This document shows, one piece after another, positions 18,073 through 35,940 of a stretch of 64,000 bases of DNA. A program made the position numbers and the translations under genes. Each line of letters opens with the position of its first letter. Position 1 is the first letter of the stretch. The stretch is from Bigelowiella natans CCMP2755 (taxonomy: Eukaryota > Protista > Cercozoa). The notes below the pieces were generated by a model, which had not been told where the DNA came from, ran no database searches, and saw nothing but the letters and a program-made list of their open reading frames with translations. The stretch lies in the NCBI GenBank assembly GCA_000320545.1, contig ADNK01000825.1:62001-126000 (forward strand), given 5' to 3'.

Positions 18073-20922
18073 GTACGGGAAAGAGTGCAAATAGGCGCAC
18101 GTGCTACTACTTCCATTACTGCTACTACCACAACTGCTACTCCTACTGCTGCCACTATATTGCATATTACGTATACTCATCATCATTATCATCACCGTCA
18201 TCATCATCATCATCATAATCATCTTCATCTAGGTGCTAGAGAGAGCCGAGCTTATATCGAATGAGCTGCTATGGGTGCTTTTGCGACTATCTTGCTGCAA
18301 GGAAGCTCTATATTCCATCCTTCGCAGACCGAAATCGGTCAATCTCATATGTAAGCTAGCAATATTGGGAACTACGTGGGTGCATGACAACACCAACAGT
18401 AGCAGCAGTAGTAGCGACTCTTCGTCCTCCTCTTTTTCGTCGTCGTCGTTGTCCCCGACAGGGGCAGGACATATCACAAGGCTGCTCGCACTACATATTT
18501 GCCGACGATTACTACCAATGGTAGATCCAACGGTGGTGCCCACGGTTGAAGGTAACGAGGAGGACGGGGAGAAGAAGAAGAAGAAGAAGAAGAATGCGGA
18601 ATTCTACCTCGGTCGGCAGCGGAGGCATCCTGCCTCGCAGTCGTCGTCGTCGTCGAAGAATGGTGACGCTGCTGCCGCTGCTATCGTTGATTGGAAACTG
18701 CTTGATACCACCCCTGAGGCGTTGTTGGCCGGAATCTTGAAGAGTGTGGCGGCATGCGACCCGCTGCTAATGACAACGACGACGACGACGACAAATAGTC
18801 TAGACTCAGAGGAACGAGGACCATCTTTGGCATCATCACCATCATCACCATCATCATCTCGTCTCCCTCTCGCCCCCTCCTCCTACCCCAAATCTCAACT
18901 GTTTTCTTGCGCCAACGAGGCCATATGCATCTACAGACGCCTCCTCGCGACGGACGCGTGGGCTCCCATGGCACTCGATGCCATGGAGGAAGCCTTAGAA
19001 CCGCTGCGAAGGAAAAAAACGACGCCAGGAATGATGGAGGAGAAGGAGGAGGAGAAGGAGGGGCCTGGAGAGGAAAACGATCAACAGCAACATGCTGCTC
19101 GTATGAAAACAAAGATGGAAAGACTGGTCGCGACGCTGCACATCCTAGGCGGCGGTTTCGACGTGATAACGGAGGGCAGTCAAGTTGTAGTGCGATACCT
19201 TGCTGAAGGCTCCTCTTCCTCTTCTTCTTCTTCTTCTTCTTCTTCTTCTTCTTCTTCTTTTCCAAACAATAGCAACGATCAGAAGCAGCGACAGCAGCAC
19301 GAAAAGCATGCTGCTGACAATGAGGACGGCGGCGGCTACGACAGCAACAAGATGCGCGGTGTAATCCTGTGCCTGTCCCCTCTAACCGCCCATATGCAGC
19401 ACCGGAGGCAAGGAGAGCAGGTGGTGGAGATTGACTGGGTAAGGTATTCCGCTGAGGTCGTTCCAACGGTGGAGTTCCCCTACAACGAGCTCAACCAGCT
19501 CCACTCATGCTCGTCGATGCAGCTCTCACGGATTCTTGACATCGTTGCCACGTTTTTTATCAAGACGAGGGAGGGCGGTGACGGCAGTGAGAGCGAGGCG
19601 TCAGCATGCTTAAGCCGAGAAACTCTACGGAAGAAAGCGACTGCAGCCGCTGCCACCTCCTCCTCCTCCTCCTTCTCAGTGGGGCAGCTGCTACAGCTTC
19701 TGTTCCCAAAGTACCTTCGTTTGCTATGCGGAAAGGCGATGGAGCCTGCACTCGTTGCAGGATGGGAAGGATCACGGTTCCCGATGTGCAGAGATACGAT
19801 CATCAAAACCGCCCTTCAGCCCGCCATCAGAAAACAGCCACTTGCAGCGGCAACAGCGCGCTCCCCGTCCTCCAACACAGCCCTGAACAAAGGCAGTATG
19901 GAGGAGGAGGTGGAGGAGGAGAAGAAGAACAGCAACAAGGAGAATGCTAGTAATAGTAGTACGAGCAGTAATCAATTTGGAGGCTTTGGCAGCAGTAGTA
20001 GTAACTCTGGAGACTTTGGCAGCAGTGGCGGTCAAAGCGGTGGTAACTCTGCACTTACACTTCTTCTTTCATAATTTCTGTATTGTTTTGTTTTCTTAAA
20101 AAACCATTGATTAAAAAAATAGTAATAAAATTGATATTTCTTTTAATATTGTAGTTTTTGGAAAATGAAAGTTATTCAAAGATATTCAAGTCTTGAACAT
20201 AAATTCCTCTTGATTGCAGGTGGAGGCTTTGGCAGCAGTAGTAACTCCAGACGCTTGTGCTTGTTTTTTAAGAATACCGGCACCTGTAGGTACGGGGTTA
20301 ACTGTCACTTCTCGCACGCTGCTGGTCCTGAGAGTACCAATGCGGTACCTAGGAATACTTTCAGTAGCTTTGACAACAAGAATAGTAGTAGCTCTGGAGG
20401 CTGGGGCAGCAGCAGTAGTAACTCTGGAGGCTTTGGCGGCAGTGGCGGTGGTAACTCTGCACTTACAATTTTTTCCCATAATTTCTGTATTGTTTTGCTT
20501 TTTTAAAAAACACTAATAAAAAAAAATTGTAATAAAAGTGATTTTTCTTTTAATATTGTAGTTTTTGGAAAATGAAAGTTATTCAAAGATATTCAAGTCT
20601 TGAACATAAATTCCTCTTGATTGCAGGTGGAGGCTTTGGCAGCAGTAGTAGTAACTCTGGAGGCTTTGGCAGCAGTGGCGGTCAAAGCGGTGGTAACTCT
20701 GCACTTACAATTCTTCTTTCATAATTTCTGTATTGTTTTGTTTTCTTAAAAAACCATTGATTAAAAAAATAGTAATAAAATTGATATTTCTTTTAATATT
20801 GTAGTTTTTAGAAAATGAAAGTTATTCAAAGATATTCAAGTCTTGAACATAAATTCCTCTTGATTGCAGGTGGAGGCTTTGGCAGCAGTAGTAGTAACTC
20901 TGGAGGCTTTGGCCCCAGAGGC

Positions 20923-20956
<34 letters not shown>

Positions 20957-22911
20957 CCAAAGAAGGGAGGACAGCAACAGATACAGGCAGTATCTTCGGT
21001 ACCATAACTCTGCTCGTGCAGGGGATAAACGAGGATTTCAAGGGTATGATGAAGAAGGAGGGGAACGATTATGTACAGCTTCTGGACGAATCTAACATAG
21101 ATAAATGGTGCGTGGGGGGAGCGGCATATGAAGCTCTGATTCTCCGTCTCTCGCACACGATAGCGTTGCTATTGAAACAGCAGCAGCAGCAGCAAGAACA
21201 GCAGATTCCCTCATCGTTGGTCCCTTCCGCAAAGATGATGATGATGAAGCTCATCACCGGTAACGAGGATGAAGAAAAGGGTGAAGATAGACTACAACCC
21301 TCAACACCTGAGAATAGTAAGCAGAAGACAGAGAATATGGAGCGCAAATCAAAACTGCGAGCCGCCGATCACTCCTTGTTTGGGGATTTTCAGCAGCAGC
21401 AGCAGCAGCAGCAATTTGCAGCCTCCGCGGATCCTTTTCTTCGCCCTCCTGCTGCTCCTCCCCTGCCCGTGTTCGCAGGGCTCATCGGCGACCCGCGCTG
21501 CTACTTCGAGCAAAGCTTTGCTGACTCCATATCCTGCTCCTCGTCCTCCTCGCAGGCGGTGGAGGAGAAGTTGGAAGCAAAGAGCAGCGGCAACAACAAC
21601 AACAACATCAACAACTACAACAACAATGTCGATACTGCTGCCATGTTATCTGGGATCCGACTCCAAGCCTACTCGTCCCTTCTTAGCTCGCTCAATTGTG
21701 CAGAGCAGCGCCCTCGAAATCAGCACAAGGAGGGTGGCGAGCAACACGCCGCCACGGCTCCTTACAAGAAGTTGCATCGCCTCCGCAATTACACTGAGAT
21801 TGAACTAGGCCATTCGGCGTCTGTTTGTGAGAACGCGTTGTACTTCAGCGGCAGCGAAGGCGCGGGAGGGCAACAATACCGAGGAGGAGACCAAACAATT
21901 CGGCCGCACGGCGAGCATACCGACGACACGAGTGATAATGATTTCTTGGAGAAGCGAGATCCCAGTGCGTGCGTAGTCGTTCCATTACTCGTTGAAACGC
22001 TCTTAAGATCCGGCCAGGTAGCGTATACATCAACGGTATTAGATGGGTGAGGCGAAGAAGTTGGAGAAGAAGAAGAAGAAGTAGTAGTAGTAGTATGGTG
22101 AAAAGACGGAGTGGTGGTGGTAATGGTGGTGGCATCTACTAGATAGGTCAGGAGTGGGTGCGTGTAAGTATTCACAATGGATTTTAGAATGGGCGGGGGG
22201 AGAGGGGGGGAGGGAAGGGATACCGAAGGTTTTGTTTTGTGTGTAGGATCGAGGGCCTTGTTTTTAATATTTTGTCCTGTATAGGATTTTGATTGCTTTG
22301 AAACCTCCCATCAATTGCTGCCACGGCTTCCTAGCTTACTTGTTATCATTATCACTATCATCATCATCATCATCACTTTTTTTGATCCTGCCTCATCAAC
22401 ACAAGGGGGCAACCTTCTCGATGTGTGTCTGGCTGGCGCGCGGCACCTCTTCTGGCCGACTCCTAGCGTTTCGAGCGGAAGGAAATACGACTGGAAGCAG
22501 CGGTGGTGGCGGCTGTGGGTTGTTCGGCGATGGGTGGTTCTCCGTCAACGCACGTGTGAGCGAAGAAGGCCGTGATATCGTCGACGGCAAAGAGCCGATC
22601 ATAATCCTAGAGGTGGAGATGTACAAAAGCGGAGGAGGGAGGGGAAGAGAACGCGCCAGTATCATTACGAGTCTTCTTCCTCCTCCCCCCCCTCCCAAAT
22701 CTGCAAAGCATCCTGAGCAATATCTAAGAACAGAGGCCTGGTATCATATTAGCGTAAACATCAGGAGGGTTGATGGCGCTCCTAGTGCTAGCCTCGCAGT
22801 TTTCGTCAACGGTGAGGAGTGGAAGTTTCAGCAGTAGTAGTAGTAGGGAGTAGTAGTAGCTGCAGAAGGTGTAGAGATCTAGCAGCATCTGCAGTGAACA
22901 ACATAACGATC

Positions 22912-22947
<36 letters not shown>

Positions 22948-22948
22948 A

Positions 22949-22982
<34 letters not shown>

Positions 22983-23195
22983 TTATATACAACGGGTCGT
23001 CTTTTCTTGGCAGACAACACGTTGAGGCTTAATCGTGATGATCACCTCCTGATTCATACTAAAATCCCCAGCGTTCTTAGAAGTGTCTTCTAGCAGATAC
23101 ATGCCTCAATCATGCGTGGACAACACAGCCATTTCCTTATATCCATCGGGGGAAATTGCACCCACCAAACTCGCTGACAATGATACTTACCGCAG

Positions 23196-23268
<73 letters not shown>

Positions 23269-24206
23269 ATCATATATCGATAGGCGAACAATATGGGCGC
23301 AATGTATCCATTCGTCTACTGCCTCCGCGGCCAAGGCACAATAAGAACTCCATGAGGAAGGAGAAGGAGGAGAATGTGAAGCAAAAAGGGGACAACAAGT
23401 TCATTTCTTCTTCTTCTTCTACCAATGCGACGCTGTTAGAATGGGAAGAATTTGGGCTAAAAAGGCTGCATGCCGTGTTTGCTCACGGATTGACGTGTAA
23501 GATCCACACTCTCCTCGTCTTTGGTGCAACGGTTCCAAAGCAGGCCCTTAGGCGGCAAAGGCAGCAGCAGAAGAGGCAGCATCAGTCGTTCGTATCCTCC
23601 TTCCCCTTACTTGCAAATACGAGGAAATTGGTGTCTGCATACCGAGCAACCGTGGCTGCCACACAGCACCTTAGAGGAGGAGGAGGAGGAGGAGGAGGAG
23701 GAGGAGGAGGAGGTGGAGGAGTATCCCCAACCACCACGGCGGAGGAGAAGCATGATAATGATAATAAGATGATACCGATGAAAGCGGTTGTAATTACTCC
23801 TCACAAGATGGAGGCGGCCATCGAGCACAGAGGCATTGCACGACTTGACTTGCCGCAGCTTGCTTCTGCACCTCCCAATTCGAATATCTGCTCTCCTCGC
23901 TCACTTGAACATGTGCGCGGGTTTTCTCCGTCATTGCTGTGGAGTCCGCTCGTTGCATGTTCCTACAGCTTCGTCACCAAGTTGTCGACAGGCCAACGCT
24001 TGCTACCTGAGACAGCAATGGTTCCTCTGATTCATGTGTTATCTAGTGACGATGAAGAGGATGATGATGATGGTGAACATGATGATGTCGATCAGAACTG
24101 AATTTGGAAGAAGGATACTGTCAAAAGATAATGCACATAAAGACCAAAATTACTCGGCTTCTGCCTTGTTACAGAGCAAACCTATGCGTGTTTTCCATTC
24201 ACAATT

Positions 24207-24250
<44 letters not shown>

Positions 24251-24451
24251 CACACTAGCACAGCAAACGACGGTGTCCTTTTGAATGTGTCATATCAGGT
24301 GAAGACGCATGGCGGGGAGACCATGTTCGGCGTTGCGCTCTCGAGTGATGATGTGCTCACGGTACAGATACCGCCACAACTTGCAAGCTTCCTGAGGGAG
24401 AAGAACAAGAACAAGGCTGCTTCTACAGGGGGAGGTGGAGGAGAAGGAGGT

Positions 24452-24501
<50 letters not shown>

Positions 24502-25916
24502 CAGTTTTGATTCTTCTGGCATTATGCCCAGCGATCGGCAAAAGGAAAAAATAAATAACGTTACAAGTGCTACCATAGTGTTTTTCCAAGGCTAAAAATG
24601 GGGTGGTTTACCACGAGGGGGATCATCGATAGCCGTATGTCAGTCCAGTTTGAAAATTGCGGAAAGAAGAAGAAGCGACGTACAACGCGGTCATTTTATG
24701 CTGACGTGGTACTGGTAATCTAGGGGACTTATTCGGCAATAATAGTGGTGGTGGCTTCGGCTTAGGTTCGAGCTCCGGTTCGGGATCAGCAGGTTCTCTT
24801 GGTTCAGGTTCTGGTTCAGGCTGGGGTTCCGGTTCCGGTTCTGGCTCAAGCGACAACGGCGGTGGTAGAAACAACAGCGGTGGCTTTAGCTTCGGCGGTG
24901 GTAGAAACAACGGCGGTGGCTCTAGCTCCGGCGGTTTTGGCTCTGGCTTCGGCGGTGGTGGAAACACCGGCGGTGGCTCTAGCTCCGGCGGTTTTGGCTC
25001 TAGCTTCGGCGGTGGTGGAAACACCGGCGGTGGCTCTAGCTCCGGCGGTTTTGGCTCTGGCTTCGGCGGTGGTGGAAACACCGGCGGTGGCTCTAGCTCC
25101 GGCGGTTTTGGCTCTGGCTTCGGCGGTGGTGGAAACACCGGCGGTGGCTCTAGCTCCGGCGGTTTTGGCTCTGGCTTCGGCGGTGGTGGAAACACCGGCG
25201 GTGGCTCTAGCTCCGGCGGTTTTGGCTTTGGCTTCGGCGGTGGTGGAAACACCGGCGGTGGCTCTAGCTCCGGCGGTTTTGGCTCTGGCTTCGGCGGTAG
25301 CTCTAGCTCCGGCGGTTTTAGCTCTAGCTTCGGCGGTGGTGGAAACACCGGCGGTGGCTCTAGCTCCGGCGGTTTTGGCTTTGGCTTCGGCGGTGGTGGA
25401 AACACCGGCGGTGGCTCTAGCTCCGGCGGTTTTGGCTCTGGCTTCGGCGGTAGCTCTAGCTCCGGCGATTTTAGCTCTAGCTTCGGCGGTGGTGGAAACA
25501 CCGGCGGTGGCTCTAGCTCCGGCGGTTTTGGCTCTGGCTTCGGCGGTAGCTCTAGCTCCGGCGGTGGTGGAAACACCGGCGGTGTCCTTGGTAGTGGTAG
25601 AAACAACGGCGGTGGCTCTAGCTCCGGCGGTTTTGGCTCTAGCTTCGGCGGTGGTGGAAACACCGGCGGTGGCTCTAGCTCCGGCGGTTTTGGCTCTGGC
25701 TTCGGCGGTGGTGGAAACACCGGCGGTGGCTCTAGCTCCGGCGGTTTTGGCTCTAGCTCCGGCGGTGGCGTTGGTGGTGGTAGAAACATCGGCGGTGGCT
25801 TTAGCTTCGGCGGTGGTGGAAACAACGGCAGTGTCTTCGGCGGTGGCTTTAAGACCACGGAGGTGGATAATATATGATGATGACCAAGTAGTATTATGCG
25901 TGTTTGTGCGTGTCTC

Positions 25917-25950
<34 letters not shown>

Positions 25951-26229
25951 TTGTAGTAGTAGTAGTTGTGTCAGATAAGAGTGGCGAATACACAGGAAAC
26001 AGTATATCCACTCCACACTCCATCACGCCACACTTTAAAAATGGAATTGTGAAATTAGTGGTGGTACCGTAGTCTGAGAACCAACCATTAACAACAACAA
26101 CAACAAATTAGGAGCGGCATCGGGGAAAATTCGGCTCCAGCCACGTCGAGCTACACCAGAGCATTACGAAAATGCACCAGTACAGTAGAATCCCATTCGA
26201 AAATATCAATCTTAAGAAATCTTTCAATA

Positions 26230-26261
<32 letters not shown>

Positions 26262-29200
26262 GTGCAGTTTAATTTTCACGACGCTATAGTAGATATGAAT
26301 GTACGATAAACCAACATCCGCCATTCCTCTGCTTATTTCGAGAGCAGGCATGGATGATGCATCTCCCACAACCAAAAATGGGAATTAAAGACTGCAACGT
26401 TACAGCACTTTGTTTCTTGCCTAACTACTACAGCAACAACTACTACTACAACTACTATGCTACTGCTGCTGCTACATACAATAATCAGCACCTTTGTTTC
26501 TTTCTCTTTTATCATCAAGGTATAGCCGATGTAACTTTGAGGAACTGCGTTTGAAAGATTACCGCAACGTAATCTAATACACGCTGACGAGATATTAAAA
26601 ACAGAAGGGAGGGGTTAGATGGGGGTGGGAGGTGGGGGGGGTAAATGAATGTGAGCTGTAGTAATGTATTTGTCATAGCGAGAGCATCGATGATTCTGCT
26701 TGGGATGCAACATTCATTTTTTGTGCTACGAGACCCTTTCATATTCTCCGAAGCAGAAAAATATGTTTTTTGGGAATTGTACACGTATCTGCAATTATGC
26801 GAGGAGAAAGCTCGAAGAATCTTGTTTATGATAGCATGCGTTGCGCTACGAATAACATTCTAGGGGCAAAAAGGAGGGGCTAACCATGGGGGCGGTCTTG
26901 GTGGCGGCAGTGCCTTCGGCTCGAAGTCGAAAGGTGAATGATGCATTTTGGAAAAGGGAGGGGGGGGGGAGCTGCTGGGAATGTTCATTCAATCCATCTG
27001 CATATAGTAAAACGCTATTTCTTAATATCCACTTAATCAGGCTTTGGCAGCAGCTCTGGTAGCAGTTGCGGCAGCGGTGGAGGTCTACGAATCGAGATGG
27101 AACTTGTACCGATCTGCGACAAGAACGTGAAACGGTCATCGTCTCAGGTGTCTAGTAGCAAAGGCTTTCTTTGGCTTGGGCCAGGTGGAGGTGCTGATGA
27201 TGACGAACGAATCCTAGATTTACAAGCCGATGGCACCATCAACATCCATAACAAGGGCAAACGAGGAGGAGGAGGAGGAACACCGAAGGCACCGGAGAAA
27301 AAAGAAAAGAAGAAGGGAGAAGAGGAATCAATGCCGTTATCATTCGCAGAAGGAACATCGTCACAAAAGACGAAAAAGGACAACAACAACAACAACAGCA
27401 ACAAAGCTGGGGGATTATTATTTAGTGGGTGTACGCTTAGGCTGCAGGGCCCTTCTTCTTCTTCTTCTTCTTCTTCTTCTTCTTCTTCTTCTTCATCACT
27501 GACATCTCCTCAATCACCATCATCTTCGGATAGCAATGAGAAGTTGCTAAAACAGAAAGGTGGTCATCACGAAGATGCTACTGCTGCTCCTGCTCCTGCT
27601 GCATTAACTACTACTTCTAACGAGGAGAATGATGCCAAGATCCCACCAGCTGCCGCTGTCAGCACCAACGAGAGCAAGTGGGGATTCTTTTCCGGATCAA
27701 CTGATGGCGGGGACACTTCGTCCCCCTCGGCCGTTACTTCCGGTACCCTTCCCGTTGAAACAGTAGTTTCTAGTAATAGTTGCAGTAGGTGATTATCGCG
27801 TGTGGAGGGAGATGATTGATGACCCTTACTCATATATACTGCAACAACCTTACTAGCCTGCTAGAATGTTGTGCCTAGAATATTGCCACCTGACTGTGTG
27901 TATCCTTATTTTCTCCTGTAAAAAGACGTGGCCACTTCCTATCCGGAACGAGCAAAGACCGAAGACTACAAAGAAGGGGTTCTGTTCTCCTTTGAAGATG
28001 AGCTCCAGCATTCGAGATTGGATCCTGTGACCCTCCAGCAGACGCCATCTGGCAAGGACAGTGATAATGGTGATGGGGGGGATACTGCTAGCGGCGGTGC
28101 TTATCACCCGCCTACTCATCGCGTGATAATTCTCCTATGTGCCACCTCTGATCGAGTTGCTGTCCAAGTCAACGACAAAGTGAGAGGGTTCTCTCGGTCA
28201 TCGTTGGGCGATATTCTCAACGAGGAGAAGAAGGGGAGGGGGGTATGGAATAACGGCACCGCCAATACTCTTCGGGTGGGTGGGTTCGGTGTGCTCATCC
28301 ACTCGTTAACGCTCAGTACATTCGACGAGGATATCAGCCACGTGGTCCAACAGAATATTGCAAACGTGAAAGGCGAGAGGGGAACGGTAGCAGCAAACCC
28401 TACGCCGTCTAAACATACTTTTGGAAATATGCAGCAGCCGGGGTCGGGGGGGAGATGGGTTAGGGCTAGTGGGGGTCAAGACAGTTCTAACTCCCAATCT
28501 TTCGGTGATCCTATCGCTGCAAAGAACGACGCTGTCGATCAAAGAGCGGATGATTTTCGCATCTCGGGAAGAGACTCGTCGCAAAGCTCCAGCCCTAACA
28601 GCCCTGCTTCGCCCTCCTCCCCTTTCTCCGCACAAACCCTATCATCCCCAACACGCCAAACATTTGGCAATTTCAGTAGCGCCACCAATATCGAGGAGCG
28701 GAAGCAGCAGCAGCGGCGGCGAGAACGAAGGCGCAGCGTAGTGCGACCTGCAAGCTCCAGGCCAAAGTCGTCGCAGTGCTCCCCGAAACCGCCGCAACCG
28801 CTTTCCAGAGTCCTGACAACTCTACAGGTAGAAGATGAGGAGAAGCTGCAGCAGCAGCACAGTGCCGTATACAGCGACAAAACTCATGGTGGTGGTAGTG
28901 GTGGTAGTGGTGGTAGTGGTGGTAGTGGCAGCGGTTTTGTGCTGCAGGCCTTTGAATCTATCTGGTTGGCCGCTGCCGCTGGTAGTGGCGATGGTGGGGA
29001 AATTTCCTCCTCCCCCCTGTCTTCTATTTCCCTTCCGCGCCTGCAGGGGGCTAGAGGAGGGGATGCTCCGTGCCTACAAGAAGACGTACATTCCTCAGCA
29101 CCAAAGTCGGAGGAGAAAGCGCAGCGATTGCAGGCAGAGACCAAGGTAAAGCTGCTAAGAGCATGGAGCGGGCTACCATTGTCGTGGTGTGCTTTCGCAC

Positions 29201-29804
29201 TGCACATGAGCCAGGGAGACTTGGCATCCGCATCGTCGTGGTTGTTGCTTCCCGCGACCACTCTGTTGGCAAAGCGCCTGGACCTTGCCGCCAACCTACA
29301 CAGAAAGTATGCGGCTGCTGCGGGATACTCAGTAATGAGATGTTTCGAAGCTGTCTTGAGCTGCCATCCCATTCTCCCCGCTTCATCATCGTCACCATCA
29401 CATGCAACAGCAACTCGAGACGATTCCTGCTATCATGAGGACGACGATGTCGACGTCATGGCCTGCCTTCGGTGGTTATTGCAGCGGGGAGTCGACGCCG
29501 ATACCGACACCAGCAACAATGGAGAAGGAGGCGGGAAACCAGCTGGTGCGGAGGGATGTGTGGAGGACGATCACGTAGAAACGAAGACGAAGGATGACGG
29601 AAAGATGGGTAGTAGTAATTGTTAGTTATACCTCAATACCTAAATATATATATATATATATATATGTATTTGTATGATTTACTTCAAGAGCCGCATGTAT
29701 ATGAGCCAGCCAATGATTCTCTTGCTGCCTTCTTCCAGTGTAATCATAGAATTATCATTATCACTGCATCTATAATCATCACTTTCATCTACCTCCCATT
29801 GTGC

Positions 29805-31685: not shown

Positions 31686-34050
31686 CAGTGATCTTGATGA
31701 TAGTGGTAGGTTGTTTTTCCCTGCCTTCCTGAGCTCGGCGTGGTCCCGAGTCCTCGTCCAAGTGCTCCGAGCTTACAAGAAGAGCAAGAAAACAGGCAAA
31801 TCAAATATTTATAGTTGTGGTTTTGGCTCGCCTAAAGAGAAAGACGGCGATTACTTCCAAAATATCGACAAACGGAACTTGCTTCTATGCAAAGCACTAG
31901 CGCTCCGGCTGGCACGCATCGCTCACATTCGATCGGTGCGCTTCTCCCGCAAAACCCTTAGCGATATCCGCGAGATTGTGGAGCGGATGAAGACGCGCTC
32001 GGCTGTTGTCTATGCATGCGTCGAAATATTGGCTGCCCGTCATCTCTACGGCAATAATAGCGGCAATGGGGGATCTAGTAGCAGCAGTAGCAGCAGTGTA
32101 TTGCCGCCCTCTCCATCTAGCATATCCCCCCCCGCTTATATCGTGCGGGTCGCCAAGTTCATACGAATAGGCAAGATTCTCCTGAACACCCGGATGGCAA
32201 GTAAGCTGAGGAATCTCCCCGAAGAATATGCCACAGCTTCCGCTCCTAAGCACAATGATCACAAGAATAATAGTTCCTCTACACTCCCTGGCTCCGGTTT
32301 CAGCGGTCTCAGCGGTTTCGGCACCGGTTTCGCCTCGACGTCGACGATTCCTAGCAGCGGGGGCAGCGGAAATGCGAAGGAGAAAAAGAAGCAACAGGAT
32401 AGTGCTGGGGCAGCGCTACGGACCTATAGCTTTGAAGATGATTTGCAGCTAATAAAGCGTAGCGGTCATAATGCGACATCTTCATTGGACATGAAGAGAC
32501 TGAAGCAACTGCAGCACTGCGCTAGTATTCTTCAGGAAATTTGGCCGCTGATCAATACCACGCTCCCAAGGTGTGCTCTACTATTAGTGCTATTAGTAGA
32601 AGTAGAGTAGCAGTAGCAGTAGTAGTAGTAGTAGTAGTAGTAACAGCAGTTTTGCGTTTTTCATCATGTATTATCGTAGCTGGATAGCGATGGCAGAAGC
32701 TAGAGCATCTATGCAGCACTAACGTGAACAAATTTAGTGAATATAGGAACTCCTGCGCGCGGGCACAAGAAAATATACATTATCTTCATGATCACCGTTT
32801 CTCCTTCTTCTTCTTCTTCTTCTTCTTCTTCTTCTTCTTCACGATGCAGGGGTGCGTCGATTCTGAGCGACATGGCACGTGATCTTCGTTGGTTGATTCC
32901 CTTCGCCACTCGCACCCAGTACTGGAAACCGCAAAATGAGGTGTCGCGCGCCATGCTCGAGATTCTGCTGGATCGTGGCAAAGCAAGGAAATGGATGGCA
33001 GAAACAACATCGCAACATAACTCATCCTCCTCATCCCCCTCCTTCCCCTCTAGCGATTCACAGTCGCATGCACAATCATCACCATCATCATCTTCTTCTT
33101 CTTCATCATCACGCATGTCCTTGCGGTCCTCCGATTCTCTGTTCGAGCAGCTCTATCGTAAGATCATGCACTGGTAGTCGCCTCTCCTCCTCCAAACTAC
33201 TTACAGTACAGTATTAAGTAGCAGCAGCAGCAGCAGCAGCAGCAGCGGGGGTGGTAGATGAGATGGTAGAATCAGTGAGATTGGCAGGCCGAACGGTGTC
33301 AAATTTTGATGTTTATTCTGGCAACCTATTCTCGTCTCGCAGTGTCTTGCTGCAAGTTTATTTAGTTGTTTGCTGCCCCACCACAGGCCGGCTCGATCTT
33401 ACCGTGTGAGCAGGCACGTCCGGATATTTAAAGTGAATCTTAGCTTCCACCAATCTCCCCCCCCCCCCCCCTTTTTTCCACCTCTTCTTCTTGCTTCTCC
33501 TCATACCTCCTACGTTGCAATATTTTAATGGACCGTCTAGTATCATACTTAAATTTCATCCTCACTCCCTCCCCCCCCCCTCCTCAGGTAAGATTTGTGG
33601 GAGAAGGCGGTATAGATAGTGGAGGGCTGTATAGAGAATGCTTCTCGGAGATATGCAAGGAGCTCATGAACCCCGCGCTGGGGATCCTTATCCCTTGTCC
33701 TAACTCGAAGGTAGTAGTAGTAGTAGTATTAGTAACAAAACACACATCAGGCACATATGCTACTACAACTACCACTACTACTAAGACTATCACTCTTTCC
33801 AACCCAACTATTGTTATATCGATGTGGTATCTTTGTCAATGTGGTGGTCTCTCAAATCCCCCCTCCTCCTTTCGACCTCTTCCTCTTATCTCCCGTGCAG
33901 AATGACGCAGGGCGGAACCGCGATACTTTCGTACCCGCGCCTTCAAAAGCGATGCAGAAGTTCCGGTTTCTGGGCCGTCTGATGGGGCTTGCTCTGCGTA
34001 GCGGCGAGTTGCTGTCCTTGCGAATGGCTCCTGCGGTATTATCATTATTA

Positions 34051-34090
<40 letters not shown>

Positions 34091-34642
34091 GACGGGGCAC
34101 CACACCGCTGCCACCACAACAAGTCACCACCGCCGCGAGTGAGGAGAAGAAGCATCTTTACTTTAGCTGGCTGCCCTGCCGAAATTTATACACTGTCGTG
34201 TAAGCGCATATGGTGGTGATTGTGAGGCTTCAATGTCGTATGGATTTCATCTGAGGCAGTCTTCATCCTCTCTCTCCCCTCCTCTTATCCCCATCCTCAC
34301 CATCATCACCATCATCATCACCATCGTCATCATCATCATCATTATCTCTGCCATGATCCAGGTGTGGAAAGAGCTCACGTTGCAAGCCGTCACTAAGGAG
34401 GACATGAGGGGCGTTGACGTGCTGTCATTTGGCATGATAGATGGCATGCGGAACACGAAGTCGAAGGAGATGTTTGACCATACATTTGATGACGAGGTGT
34501 TCGCTGGGTTGCGGACGGACAGCAAACGCTGCCCACTGGTGCCGCACGGAACAAGAATCCCGGTCACTTTCTCGAGGCGACTCACGTATGCTTCATATCT
34601 CTACGCTTTCCGGAAGCATGAGTTTACCGCACAGGTGTGTTT

Positions 34643-34696
<54 letters not shown>

Positions 34697-35616
34697 TGTG
34701 CGCGCGCGCGTAAGGAGGGGGGGAGGGGAGGAGGCGTGTTCGAACAGTGCAGCAGATAGATAGCCAAGGATAGTGAAATAATGACGATGCATGATGATAT
34801 CGGTGTCTATACTATCCAGATTTCTGCGATGAGAATGGGCCTTGCAGAGGTTGTCCCTAAGACTGCTCTTGTCCTATTCGATGGGGCGGAATTGCAGGTG
34901 GGGTCTCCAGTATGCAGTGATAAAAAAAGAAGAAGAAGAGGGGGACTCGCTAGGGAGGAAGAAGAAGGGGAATACAATACTAAGGCTGTGAAGATGTTTT
35001 CAATAGGATACCGCACCATCCGATGCAACACTCTGCACTGTTTATTGATTCTTCCCCACTTCCAAAAATTTCAAAATATATATATTTGTATACGTAATAG
35101 ATGTGAGCAATAATAATTTGCTGACGGGTTTGAATTTTTGTTATCCTTGGCCATATCCTTGGACAACAAATGTCATCGCCGTTTTTGGTTGGGAATGATA
35201 TTTTATAAAATAATTTTCTCCCAAATTTTCTGTCTTTCTTATGCACATTCATAGAAAGCTGTGTGCGGAGAGACTATCATCGACTTGGAGGTCTTAAAAC
35301 GCCACACAACGTACGAAGGCTACTCAGGCCTTGAGCCTGTCGTCCAGTTCTTCTGGCAGGTGAGATGTGAATGGGGAACATGATAATGGGTTTGATAATA
35401 CCGATGAGCGGAAATCATTGAAGCATGCCGTAGCCTGGTGATGGTTTATTGATATGGTTCTCTGCCTTGTTTACTCATGTGCGGCTTTACATTCAACAAG
35501 GCCTTGAGGAGATTTGACAACGATCTGCGCGTCAAGTTCTTGCAGTTTGTATGGGGAAGGTCCCGACTTCCGCAAAACGAATCCATGTGGGAAACTAGCA
35601 TGAGGGTACTTTGGTC

Positions 35617-35685
<69 letters not shown>

Positions 35686-35940
35686 GTTATTGTTGCAGTG
35701 GTGATAACGCAGCGCCAATCATCTCACATGTCCCCGTGCTACGTGGTCTCCCTCTTACTCGATTCTCGATTATCATCGTAGGTTCATTCTTGCGGCGGGG
35801 CACGTAATCCGGACGCGCGCCTTCCCCTCTCTCACACTTGTTTCTTCCAAATAGATTTACCCAGGTACACAAATGCCGAAGCCTGTTACAACAAACTCAA
35901 GATAGCCGTGGAAGAAACTGGAACGTTCGAAATGGGCTAA
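8565..35940 (+). CDS. Giant multi-exon HECT E3 ubiquitin ligase (large HERC/HECTD-like HECT) with RRM-like, CCCH, LamG/ConA-like, FG-repeat, GLEBS and UBA-like modules
   Basis: The C-terminal HECT is clear: RIFK|VRFVGEGGIDSGGLYRECFSEICKEL...FRFLGRLMGLALR...VVQFFWQ|AL...FLQFVWGRSRLP...LPLSHTCFFQIDLPRY...GTFEMG* (stop 35938-35940). Long same-strand exons run continuously from ~9.5 kb. Junctions were checked in frame from ~17 kb to the HECT domain. The start at ATG 8565 and the junctions between 9 and 17 kb are less certain. Confidence 0.85.
10088..10283 (+). other. RRM-like segment within the HECT ligase
   Basis: VIELQLTQLAATSEEIKLALSFYGEVVCVK...MWTVKFCSPESAAMAAREI resembles the RRM pattern EExLxxxFxxYGxV...VxFxxxExAxxA. 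Confidence 0.45.
19979..20912 (+). repeat. Three near-identical AT-rich introns (20043-20219, 20451-20626, 20693-20869) with repeated GGFGSSSSNS exon ends
   Basis: Each intron starts GTAACTCTGCACTTACA and ends GTTATTCAAAGATATTCAAGTCTTGAACATAAATTCCTCTTGATTGCAG. Lengths are 177, 176 and 177 nt; all are phase 1. Confidence 0.95.
20258..20317 (+). other. CCCH zinc finger (C-x8-C-x5-C-x3-H) in symmetric exon 20220-20450
   Basis: CLFFKNTGTCRYGVNCHFSH, flanked by GGFGSSS repeats. Confidence 0.9.
24724..25862 (+). repeat. Coding 57-bp minisatellite exon encoding FG repeats (GGGGNTGGGSSSGGFGSGF)n
   Basis: Unit ggcggtggtggaaacaccggcggtggctctagctccggcggttttggctctggcttc; 12 GGAAACACC cores counted, plus shortened and variant units. 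Acceptor TAG at 24721-24723, donor GT at 25863; the frame is open throughout. Confidence 0.9.
26112..26933 (+). other. GLEBS-like (Rae1/Gle2-binding) motif on micro-exons 26112-26179, 26520-26568 and 26864-26933
   Basis: Spliced translation ...ELHQSITKMHQYSRCNFEELRLKDYRNGQKGG matches the Nup98/Nup116 GLEBS pattern (H/F)QxI(S/T)xMxxYxxxSxEELRxxDYxxxxKG. All junctions are GT-AG and phase-compatible. Confidence 0.85.
29140..29482 (+). other. One or two UBA-like three-helix motifs in the HECT ligase
   Basis: KVKLLRAWSGLPLSWCAFALHMSQGDLASASSWLL, and a weaker AGYSVMRCFEAV...DVMACLRWLL. Confidence 0.55.
33387..35940 (+). other. HECT catalytic domain exons; catalytic Cys codon at 35839-35841
   Basis: The last exon, 35782-35940, translates VHSCGGARNPDARLPLSHTCFFQIDLPRYTNAEACYNKLKIAVEETGTFEMG*, matching the LPxSHTCF HECT motif. 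Confidence 0.95.

What the first reader, a model, noticed from the sequence alone, without database searches (positions are those of the whole stretch)
26112..26933. Cryptic GLEBS motif split across three micro-exons (68, 49 and 70 nt), invisible in the ORF track
Splicing gives HQSITKMHQYSRCNFEELRLKDYRNGQKGG. It keeps the I(S/T)xM..Y spacing, the invariant EE pair (essential for Rae1/Bub3 binding in known GLEBS motifs), LRxxDY and the trailing KG. It sits directly after an FG array and is followed by more FG units, as in Nup98. Conservation across three exons with exact phase matching argues for selection.
Basis: partly seen in the sequence, partly recalled or inferred. Interest (0 to 1): 0.85.

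Follow-up and report, generated by a model that had tools for sequence, protein, structure and literature searches.

The report
Borrowed Nup98 motif in ligase gene
Three tiny, intact exons in a giant ubiquitin-ligase gene of the alga Bigelowiella natans encode a copy of the short peptide by which nuclear-pore protein Nup98 holds the RNA-export factor Rae1; the copy came from a Nup98-like gene by duplication, but whether it is still spliced into mRNA is not shown.

Summary
Micro-exons 26112-26179, 26520-26568 and 26864-26933 translate as stated. They have AG/GT borders and matching phases, and in-frame stops lie just outside most of those borders.

Chance is excluded. EELRLxDY is encoded only twice in the 91-Mb genome, with none in the reversed control.

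The genome is Bigelowiella natans. Window 24498-26944 is a 78-84% identical duplicate of part of a Nup98-like gene on contig C3329, which has short FG exons and a complete GLEBS. The duplicate lies in a phase-1 intron of a large gene that ends in a HECT domain.

RNA contigs show its first exon, expanded into a 365-codon FG array, spliced in frame to the upstream host exon. Array plus micro-exons total 1284 nt, a symmetric 1-1 cassette. All six splice sites and the frame are kept in both copies.

Weak points:
- No RNA contig or junction covers the micro-exons or 27041-27224. The tool says such holes prove nothing.
- Exon 2 alone misses Pfam Nup98_GLEBS, while the matching pieces of C3329 and C3011 hit it.
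- The N-terminal GLEBS strand is deleted.
- Exons are no better conserved than introns.

Verdict: the GLEBS homology and its origin are real; current use is about even odds.

The parts
24299..24449 (+). Upstream host exon (ends in phase 1), reading VKTHGGETMFGV...GGGGGEG
   Evidence: RNA-like contigs of three studies join 24020>24299. They then join this exon to the FG exon (tables 5 and 8; coordinates worked out).
24498..26944 (+). Segment duplicated from a Nup98-like gene. The paralogue is contig C3329, minus strand, at 78-84% DNA identity.
   Evidence: Homology starts inside an FG exon of C3329 and stops where contig C3329 ends. Nothing else on the 24.9-kb contig matches the window.
24766..25862 (+). 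FG-array exon: 365 complete codons, 32 FG, 51% Gly, 25% Ser, 57-nt tandem unit. A second in-frame acceptor probably lies at 24724. The proposed donor is at 25863.
   Evidence: TRF. Translation has no stop. The 5' end is spliced to 24449 in contigs of runs X1 and X9, and probably to 24724 in X5 (table 8). The 3' end and donor are not covered by any contig.
26112..26179 (+). Micro-exon 1 (phase 0>2): ERHRGKFGSSHVELHQSITKMH(Q)
   Evidence: It is 76% identical in protein to the C3329 exon, and VELHQSITKM is fully kept. No RNA coverage.
26520..26568 (+). Micro-exon 2 (phase 2>0): YSRCNFEELRLKDYRN, the GLEBS core with the EE pair
   Evidence: One of two genomic EELRLxDY sites. Top-scoring peptide in the window. 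8/11 identical to the C3011 core. No PF21240 hit on its own.
26864..26933 (+). Micro-exon 3 (phase 0>1): GQKGGANHGGGLGGGSAFGSKSK. It is needed to restore the frame into 27041.
   Evidence: The C3329 copy has the same length and splice sites. No RNA coverage.
27041..27742 (+). Downstream host exon (starts in phase 1): GFGSSSGSSCGSGGGLRIEMELVP...
   Evidence: The frame opens at 27037, right after an in-frame stop. Its 3' end is joined to 27926 in three runs. The 5' part, 27041-27224, has no contig depth.
20165..20506 (+). FG-flanked CCCH zinc-finger exon on the same strand, about 4 kb upstream
   Evidence: PF00642, 34.2 bits. No paralogue elsewhere in the genome. Not shown to be in the same transcript.
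33757..35704 (+). HECT domain in at least five exons
   Evidence: Successive pieces match PF00632 positions 4-69, 63-151, 157-184, 187-223 and 219-247. That they share a transcript with the cassette is inferred from strand and uninterrupted coding frames only.

Best explanation
SHOWN. The window comes from Bigelowiella natans. A 2.4-kb piece of a Nup98-like gene is present a second time inside another gene. The source is contig C3329, which has a run of short FG exons followed by a complete GLEBS in four exons. The left end of the copy cuts through a source FG exon. This marks C3329 as the donor and the window as the recipient.

The first copied exon is spliced, in the FG reading frame, to the upstream host exon. 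It has grown by 57-nt tandem duplication into a 365-codon FG array. The three following micro-exons keep all splice dinucleotides, phases and open frames, and they keep the GLEBS core (VELHQSITKM..Y.....FEELRLxDY..KG).

INFERRED. The copy landed in a phase-1 intron, between 24449 and 27041. Array plus micro-exons add up to 428 codons. They therefore form a symmetric cassette that keeps the host frame only if at least exon 3 is spliced in. Exons 1 and 2 together form an in-frame 39-codon unit. The micro-exons are thus most likely part of at least some mRNAs.

The host is a very large protein whose C-terminus is a HECT ubiquitin-ligase domain. It would thereby carry a cohesive FG stretch plus a peptide equivalent to the part of human Nup98 (181-224) that suffices to bind Rae1. 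The likely mechanism is that the peptide lies across the top of the WD40 propeller of Rae1/Gle2, with the EE pair making salt bridges to two arginines. This would tether the export factor to the ligase, or the ligase to the pore.

Binding is probably weaker than for the two other GLEBS copies of this genome. The N-terminal strand is deleted, and the conserved Glu of L-E-D-Y is Lys.
For: - Organism: (100% match to JGI Bigna1 model 87453).
- Motif, borders and phases.
- Rarity.
- Paralogue and its exon structure. Its exon 2 hits PF21240 at 17.3 bits. The C3011 core hits it at 18.1 bits.
- Pairwise exon matches.
- Array exonised in frame: table 8 (X1 record 2, X9 records 11-12, X5 record 7).
- Integrity test: under drift at intron rates over the whole divergence, keeping 12 splice bases, the frame and no stops has P about 0.01. 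The 60 nt of GLEBS core differ at 3 sites (5%), against 14.2% in introns.
- The window keeps the canonical Y-5-EE spacing and LRL, where the C3329 copy has a 6-nt insertion and LRW.
- Entering 27041 in phase 0 hits a stop after 29 codons.
- Sufficiency of Nup98 181-224 and the EE salt bridges: PMC2133102 and PMC3783196.
- Exon and intron sizes are normal for this genome: PMC12730881.
Against: - None of the four proposed junctions appears in the runs laid. Contig depth is zero at 25846-26239 and 26634-27224 in three studies, although neighbouring exons have depth 7-54. The tool warns that filtered records make such holes uninformative.
- The window's exon 2 gives no PF21240 hit, while pieces of about the same length from C3329 and C3011 do.
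- The original donor and the GTKIAFQPTQ strand are deleted. The proposed donor at 25863 is a former coding GT.
- If only the window's lineage drifted, intact exons are expected in roughly 1 case in 10. This is my estimate from the rates.
- Exons differ more than introns overall.
- Phase-compatible routes that skip the micro-exons exist on paper: a G|GT donor inside the array joined to 27041 or 27227, or 25862 joined to 27448.
- Continuity with the HECT exons is not shown by RNA.
- No homologue of the host protein exists for comparison.
Confidence: 0.5

Rival explanations
1. Decaying passenger. The duplicate brought the GLEBS exons along, but only its first exon (the array) was recruited. Transcripts leave the array by another donor or end there. 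The micro-exons are unused relics that still look intact because the duplication is not old enough to have broken them.
For: - No contig or junction lies on any micro-exon or on 27041-27224 in three assemblies with good depth on flanking exons.
- Exons diverge no more slowly than introns, and changes outside the core are nearly all non-synonymous.
- The N-terminal strand and the original donor are lost.
- Exon 2 falls below the Pfam reporting limit, and a conserved Glu is Lys.
- A one-lineage drift model leaves roughly a 10% chance of intact exons (from the rates).
Against: - Without exon 3 or an equivalent, the array cannot be joined in frame from 25862 to the open frame at 27041.
- All six splice sites, the phases and the stop-free frames are kept.
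- The core is three times better conserved than introns.
- The window copy keeps canonical features that the source copy has lost.
- The read tool itself says that a dip in depth is no finding.
Confidence: 0.35
2. Separate gene. The FG array and GLEBS exons belong to a shorter FG protein, a nucleoporin-like paralogue that is not continuous with the HECT ligase downstream.
For: - Continuity from 27742 onward to the HECT exons at 33757-35704 rests only on strand and open frames.
- There is no RNA evidence beyond 28200.
- No gene model or homologue was found.
Against: - The array is spliced to upstream exons (22404-24449) that have no nucleoporin features.
- The frame runs from exon 3 into 27041-27742 and on to 27926-29625, the last junction being shown by contigs.
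- No autopeptidase domain lies on this contig.
- On the plus strand, large open frames follow one another from 9.5 kb to the HECT exons.
Confidence: 0.1
3. Chance resemblance produced by choosing splice sites that yield a GLEBS-like string.
For: Exon by exon, no Pfam hit is obtained.
Against: - There are two genomic EELRLxDY sites against 0 in the control.
- Exon 2 is the top peptide of 80,034.
- An independent paralogue has the same exons and splice sites, and its exon 2 hits PF21240.
- My estimate for the exon 1 half lying in a splice-compatible place by chance is below 1e-3.
Confidence: 0.02

Closest known systems
GLEBS (Gle2/Rae1-binding sequence) of Nup98 / Nup116, Pfam PF21240
   Same: - It has the I-T-x-M-x-x-Y, five residues, E-E-L-R-L-x-D-Y, then K-G pattern.
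- It includes the Glu pair that forms the salt bridges to Rae1 (PMC3783196).
- It covers the equivalent of Nup98 181-224, which suffices for binding (PMC2133102).
- FG repeats lie on both sides.
   Different: - It is not in a Nup98-96 type protein; no autopeptidase domain is on the contig.
- It lacks the N-terminal strand of the 57-residue hairpin.
- It has Lys for the conserved Glu before D-Y.
- It is below the Pfam reporting limit when scored exon by exon.
- It is split by two introns at positions different from those of the C3011 copy.
Nup98-like gene fragment on contig C3329 of the same genome
   Same: - 78-84% DNA identity over 2.4 kb.
- The same three micro-exons with identical splice sites and phases.
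- The same VELHQSITKM and NFEELR cores.
   Different: C3329 has two short FG exons where the window has a 1.1-kb array. It keeps the exon ...GFGTSEVVGTKIAFQPTQ, has two extra residues between Y and EE, and reads LRWEDY. Its upstream neighbours are further FG exons, not the host gene's exons.
Rae1-binding motif of the PHR ubiquitin ligases (Highwire / RPM-1 / MYCBP2)
   Same: It is a precedent for a very large E3 ligase that recruits Rae1 through one small conserved motif (PMC4806438).
   Different: PHR proteins are RING-type animal ligases. I did not test whether their motif is related to a GLEBS. Here the ligase domain is HECT, and the motif was visibly acquired from a nucleoporin gene.
GLEBS motifs of Bub1 and BubR1/Mad3 that bind Bub3
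   Same: These are short peptides with a Glu pair that bind the top face of a Rae1-like WD40 propeller (established knowledge; PMC2172680 for the Rae1/Bub3 kinship).
   Different: They are not flanked by FG repeats. To my knowledge, not tested here, they also lack the ITxM..Y and LRxxDY signature. The window's motif is of the Nup98 type, so Rae1/Gle2 is the likelier partner.

Membership tests
Nup98-type GLEBS (Pfam PF21240) | Profile score at or above the curated cut-off (27 bits) | tested here: inconclusive
Exon by exon, the window's pieces give no hit at E up to 10, and the genome-wide profile search did not list the window. Short pieces cannot reach 27 bits: the best pieces elsewhere reach 18.1 bits (C3011) and 17.3 bits (C3329).
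Nup98-type GLEBS (Pfam PF21240) | Adjacent Glu-Glu pair within E-E-L-R-x-x-D-Y | tested here: met
   FEELRLKDY at 26533-26559. The Glu before D-Y is replaced by Lys.
Nup98-type GLEBS (Pfam PF21240) | I-T-x-M-x-x-Y half at canonical distance (five residues) from the Glu pair | tested here: met
   ITKMH(Q) ends exon 1, and Y plus SRCNF then EE open exon 2, with matching phases. The spacing equals that of the C3011 copy. This is met only if the exons are spliced as proposed.
Nup98-type GLEBS (Pfam PF21240) | N-terminal strand of the 57-residue hairpin | tested here: not met
   The paralogue has ...EVVGTKIAFQPTQ before exon 1. In the window the homologous exon breaks off at ...FKTTE, and read-through gives VDNI then a stop.
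Nup98-type GLEBS (Pfam PF21240) | Embedded in FG repeats | tested here: met
   32 FG in the preceding 365-codon exon. One FG lies in exon 3 and one at the start of the 27041 exon.
Nup98-type GLEBS (Pfam PF21240) | Binds Rae1/Gle2 | not testable with these tools
   A complex prediction would need the joined peptide and a spliced Rae1 model. That step was left out. The presence of Rae1 in this genome was not tested.
Nup98-96 / Nup145 / Nup116 nucleoporins | C-terminal autoproteolytic domain (PF04096) in the same gene | tested here: not met
   The only matches in the genome are on C2723 and C903, not on C2912. The C2723 protein (P0001) has no GLEBS hit.
HECT ubiquitin ligases (PF00632) | HECT domain | tested here: met
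   Five colinear exon pieces cover profile positions 4-247 at 33757-35704. The C-terminal lobe with the catalytic Cys was not located.
HECT ubiquitin ligases (PF00632) | HECT domain and GLEBS cassette in one transcript | not tested
   The read tool was limited to one call of 5.9 kb (22300-28200). The link is inferred from strand and open frames.
Expressed exon | Junction reads or spliced contigs | tested here: inconclusive
   None were seen for 25862/26112, 26179/26520, 26568/26864 or 26933/27041. The raw-read run placed only 9 reads, and the contig sets have a hole from 25846 to about 27470 that the tool says proves nothing.

The most novel reading that the evidence does not exclude
Bigelowiella natans has built a pore-directed HECT ubiquitin ligase by exon shuffling. 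An FG-repeat plus GLEBS cassette taken from its Nup98-like gene, together with an FG-flanked CCCH finger, lets the ligase enter the FG phase of the pore and hold Rae1/Gle2. Ubiquitination would then be aimed at exporting mRNPs or at pore components. This would be a natural case of a nucleoporin docking module re-used as a substrate or localisation adaptor of an E3 enzyme.
Probability: 0.2. Interest if true: 0.75.

Novelty: new variant of a known kind. Interest (0 to 1): 0.5.

Why it matters
GLEBS motifs are known from Nup98/Nup116 and from the checkpoint proteins Bub1 and BubR1/Mad3. Here one sits in frame inside a HECT-ligase gene, and its source gene is still identifiable in the same genome. 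That would be a clear example of exon shuffling of a short linear docking motif together with its FG context.

If the exons are used, it would link the Rae1 mRNA-export factor, or the pore's FG phase, directly to a ubiquitin ligase. So far such a link is known only from the unrelated animal PHR ligases.

There is also a practical point. Functional motifs in intron-rich protists can be split over exons of 50-70 nt and escape every ORF-based or whole-protein search. In this genome all three GLEBS copies are split in this way.

Tried and rejected
- **Pfam on the window's three exon pieces, plain and extended to the flanking stops:** no family.
- **phmmer of the exon pieces of the window and of C3011 against all PDB chains:** no hit at E up to 10, because the pieces are too short.
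- **Genome-wide PF21240 search:** the window is not among the three candidates.
- **Protein searches for relatives of the host gene:** none for 27043-27741. None among 1.84 billion representatives for the 565-residue frame 27928-29625. No usable Atlas hit. Orthologue-based conservation therefore could not be tested.
- **Search with the genome's Nup98 autopeptidase protein, to collect natural GLEBS sequences for a profile of my own:** it returned only itself.
- **Read laying (one call allowed, 5,901 letters):** no support for the micro-exon junctions. The raw RNA run placed 9 reads. The depth at 26437-26633 and 27225-27421 comes from trinucleotide-repeat matches of unrelated contigs, as shown by loose ends with 0.56-0.72 agreement. 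I do not count the hole as evidence against, as the tool instructs.
- **Paralogues of the CCCH/FG part (19850-21100) and of 26934-28300:** none.
- **Other Pfam domains in ten further open frames of the host gene:** none credible.
- **C943 EELRKHDY:** taken as chance, since the control also gives 1.
- **Rejected reading:** that 27505 is an acceptor behind the CTT run. No AG lies there, and the run encodes poly-Ser.
- That covers the HMM score of the spliced peptide against shuffles, folding, and complex prediction with Rae1.
Full report
**1. What is in the sequence.**
The window is eukaryotic.
- 26112-26179 reads ERHRGKFGSSHVELHQSITKMH plus two bases.
- 26520-26568 reads one base plus YSRCNFEELRLKDYRN.
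- 26864-26933 reads GQKGGANHGGGLGGGSAFGSKSK plus one base.

Each is preceded by AG and followed by GT, and the phases fit (0>2, 2>0, 0>1). In-frame stops lie at the acceptors of exons 1 and 3 and within two codons after the donors of exons 2 and 3. The downstream frame opens at 27037, four bases before the proposed acceptor at 27040/27041. These pieces can therefore be coding only if spliced precisely.

Every step that needs the joined peptide was left out. That covers the profile score of the spliced product, shuffled controls of it, a fold, and a complex with Rae1.

**2. More than chance.**
- A back-translated pattern for E-E-L-R-L-x-D-Y has two matches in the 91.4-Mb genome, this one and C3011:2426-2449. 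The reversed control has none.
- Relaxing to E-E-L-R-x-x-D-Y gives four matches against one in the control.
- Scored against the C3011 motif, exon 2 is the best of 80,034 stop-free peptides of the window (41 against 26 for the next). The exon 1 octamer HQSITKMH is among the best six of 94,971, and it lies 366 nt upstream on the same strand.

**3. Organism and the genome's other GLEBS copies.**
The genome's Nup98-type autopeptidase open frame on C2723 is 100% identical to JGI model Bigna1 87453. The organism is therefore Bigelowiella natans. That protein has no GLEBS hit.

C3011 encodes, over two exons, HHSITAMPEYCG|KSFEELRLEDYKYHGK. Its second exon hits Pfam PF21240 (Nup98_GLEBS) at 18.1 bits, E 0.003, and this is the only family found.

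Mean exon and intron sizes in this genome are 159 and 184 nt (PMC12730881). Exons of 49-70 nt and introns of 107-340 nt are thus unremarkable here.

**4. The key result: a paralogue.**
A DNA search of the genome with 25850-27300 found contig C3329 (minus strand) at 78% identity over window 25919-26944. It also matches at 84% over 24498-24761.

The rest of this 24.9-kb contig shares nothing with the window. The window's flanks (19850-21100 and 26934-28300) have no second copy.

On C3329 the segment is the end of a run of short FG exons. It is followed by four further exons:
- an exon reading FGSSSSSGAFGGGYGGGFGTSEVVGTKIAFQPTQ
- ERHQKNNGSSSVELHQSITKMD
- YKRSDKNFEELRWEDYTN
- NNKGGNNGGGGLGGGNAFGSQSK

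All have AG/GT borders and consistent phases. The contig ends 76 nt after the last of them. The C3329 exon 2 hits PF21240 at 17.3 bits.

This looks like the N-terminal part of a Nup98-like nucleoporin. The window's homology begins inside one of that gene's FG exons. In the window this remnant (GSFDSSG..., about 24501) is intronic according to the RNA contigs. The window is therefore the recipient of a partial copy.

**5. What the copy has become.**
RNA-like contigs from three studies were laid on 22300-28200. They show the following splices: 22811>23284, 24020>24299 and 27742>27926. They also show the host exon 24299-24449 joined to 24766 (runs X1 and X9) and probably to 24724 (run X5). These are two in-frame acceptors 42 nt apart.

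From there the FG frame runs 365 codons without a stop. It contains 32 FG, 51% Gly and 25% Ser, and is built from about 15 copies of a 57-nt unit. The array is therefore exonised and read in the FG frame as part of the host protein.

The host exons on either side are both phase 1. The sum 1097 + 68 + 49 + 70 = 1284 nt equals 428 codons, a symmetric cassette. Entering 27041 directly after the complete codon at 25862 gives a stop after 29 codons. Exon 3, or all three micro-exons, restore the frame.

Downstream, large open frames continue on the same strand. Five exon pieces at 33757-35704 match HECT profile positions 4-247 in order. Upstream lies an FG-flanked CCCH finger. That all this is one transcript is inferred, not shown.

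**6. Evidence for and against present use of the micro-exons.**

*For:*
- Both copies keep all six splice sites.
- The only exonic indel is 6 nt.
- There are no stops.
- Under drift at intron rates (14.2% substitutions, 12 indel events in 759 nt) this outcome has P about 0.01.
- The 60 nt encoding VELHQSITKM and NFEELRLxDY differ at 3 sites, or 5%.
- The window keeps the canonical Y-5-EE spacing and L-R-L where C3329 is derived.

*Against:*
- Overall the exons differ more than the introns (19.8% against 14.2%), mostly by replacements.
- If only the window's lineage drifted, intactness is expected in about one case in ten.
- The window lacks the GTKIAFQPTQ stretch and the original donor. The proposed donor at 25863 is a former coding GT, and read-through gives VDNI then a stop.
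- Exon 2 alone gives no PF21240 hit, unlike the pieces of about the same length from the other two loci, probably because L-E-D-Y has become L-K-D-Y.
- No contig or junction covers 25846-26239 or 26634-27224, although neighbouring exons have depth 7-54. The raw RNA run placed only nine reads. The tool states that filtered records make a hole uninformative, so I report 'no support', not 'refuted'.

**7. Mechanism.**
Nup98 residues 181-224 suffice to bind RAE1, and deleting 192-221 abolishes binding (PMC2133102). Two glutamates of the motif form conserved salt bridges to two arginines on the top face of the Rae1 propeller (PMC3783196). The window's exons cover this region and keep the Glu pair.

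If spliced in, the peptide should dock Rae1/Gle2 (less likely Bub3) onto a protein that also carries a cohesive FG stretch and, probably, a HECT domain. A large E3 ligase that recruits Rae1 through a small motif has a precedent in the PHR proteins (PMC4806438).

I could not test binding, the presence of Rae1 in this genome, or localisation.

**8. Verdict.**
- Homology to the Nup98 GLEBS and the origin by segmental duplication from a Nup98-like gene are well supported (about 0.9).
- Inclusion in mRNA and function are open (about 0.5 and about 0.3).
- It is not a member of the Nup98-96 family. It is a new variant of a known kind: a GLEBS-plus-FG cassette shuffled into another gene.

I tested parts of it, as described above.

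Noticed in passing
L008 (G000:C3011) 1957-1991 and 2416-2506, + strand: This is the most canonical GLEBS of the genome, split by one intron: HHSITAMPEYCG | KSFEELRLEDYKYHGK. It hits PF21240 at 18.1 bits. No FG repeats occur anywhere on the 5.2-kb contig, so its host gene is unknown.
   Followed up: partly
L022 (G000:C3329) 77-2720, - strand: A run of short FG exons is followed by a complete four-exon GLEBS, cut by the contig end 76 nt after the last exon. It is probably the N-terminus of a Nup98-like nucleoporin and the donor of the window's cassette. The 20 kb upstream hold no large open frame.
   Followed up: partly
L005 (G000:C2723) 31-1824 and L009 (G000:C903) 802-1008: These are the only two Nup98 autopeptidase (PF04096) matches in the genome. 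The C2723 one is an intron-free, Asn-rich 597-codon frame with few FG and no GLEBS (JGI model 87453). The C903 one contains a TAG.
   Followed up: partly
window 24724 and 24766: The FG-array exon has two alternative acceptors 42 nt (14 codons) apart, both in frame. They are used in different RNA assemblies.
   Followed up: partly
window 20395-20913: A 243-nt tandem duplication (2.2 copies, 90% matches) repeats an FG exon together with its intron. It lies next to an exon with a CCCH zinc finger (20165-20506), and the same intron-like text MKVIQRYSSLEHKFLLIAG precedes both copies.
   Followed up: no
window 23674-23721, 27452-27494, 27263-27280: Trinucleotide runs inside exons, (GAG)16, (CTT)14 and (GGA)6, are read as poly-Gly, poly-Ser and poly-Gly. 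They break the short-read RNA assemblies and attract unrelated contigs, which inflates depth there.
   Followed up: partly
window 22289-22837 and 27928-29625: Large open frames of the host gene have no Pfam family and no relative among 1.84 billion representative proteins. The host protein outside the HECT, CCCH and FG parts is an orphan.
   Followed up: partly
L016 (G000:C943) 26757-26780: A fourth E-E-L-R-x-x-D-Y site (EELRKHDY) exists. It was not examined further and is compatible with chance, since the control gives 1.
   Followed up: no
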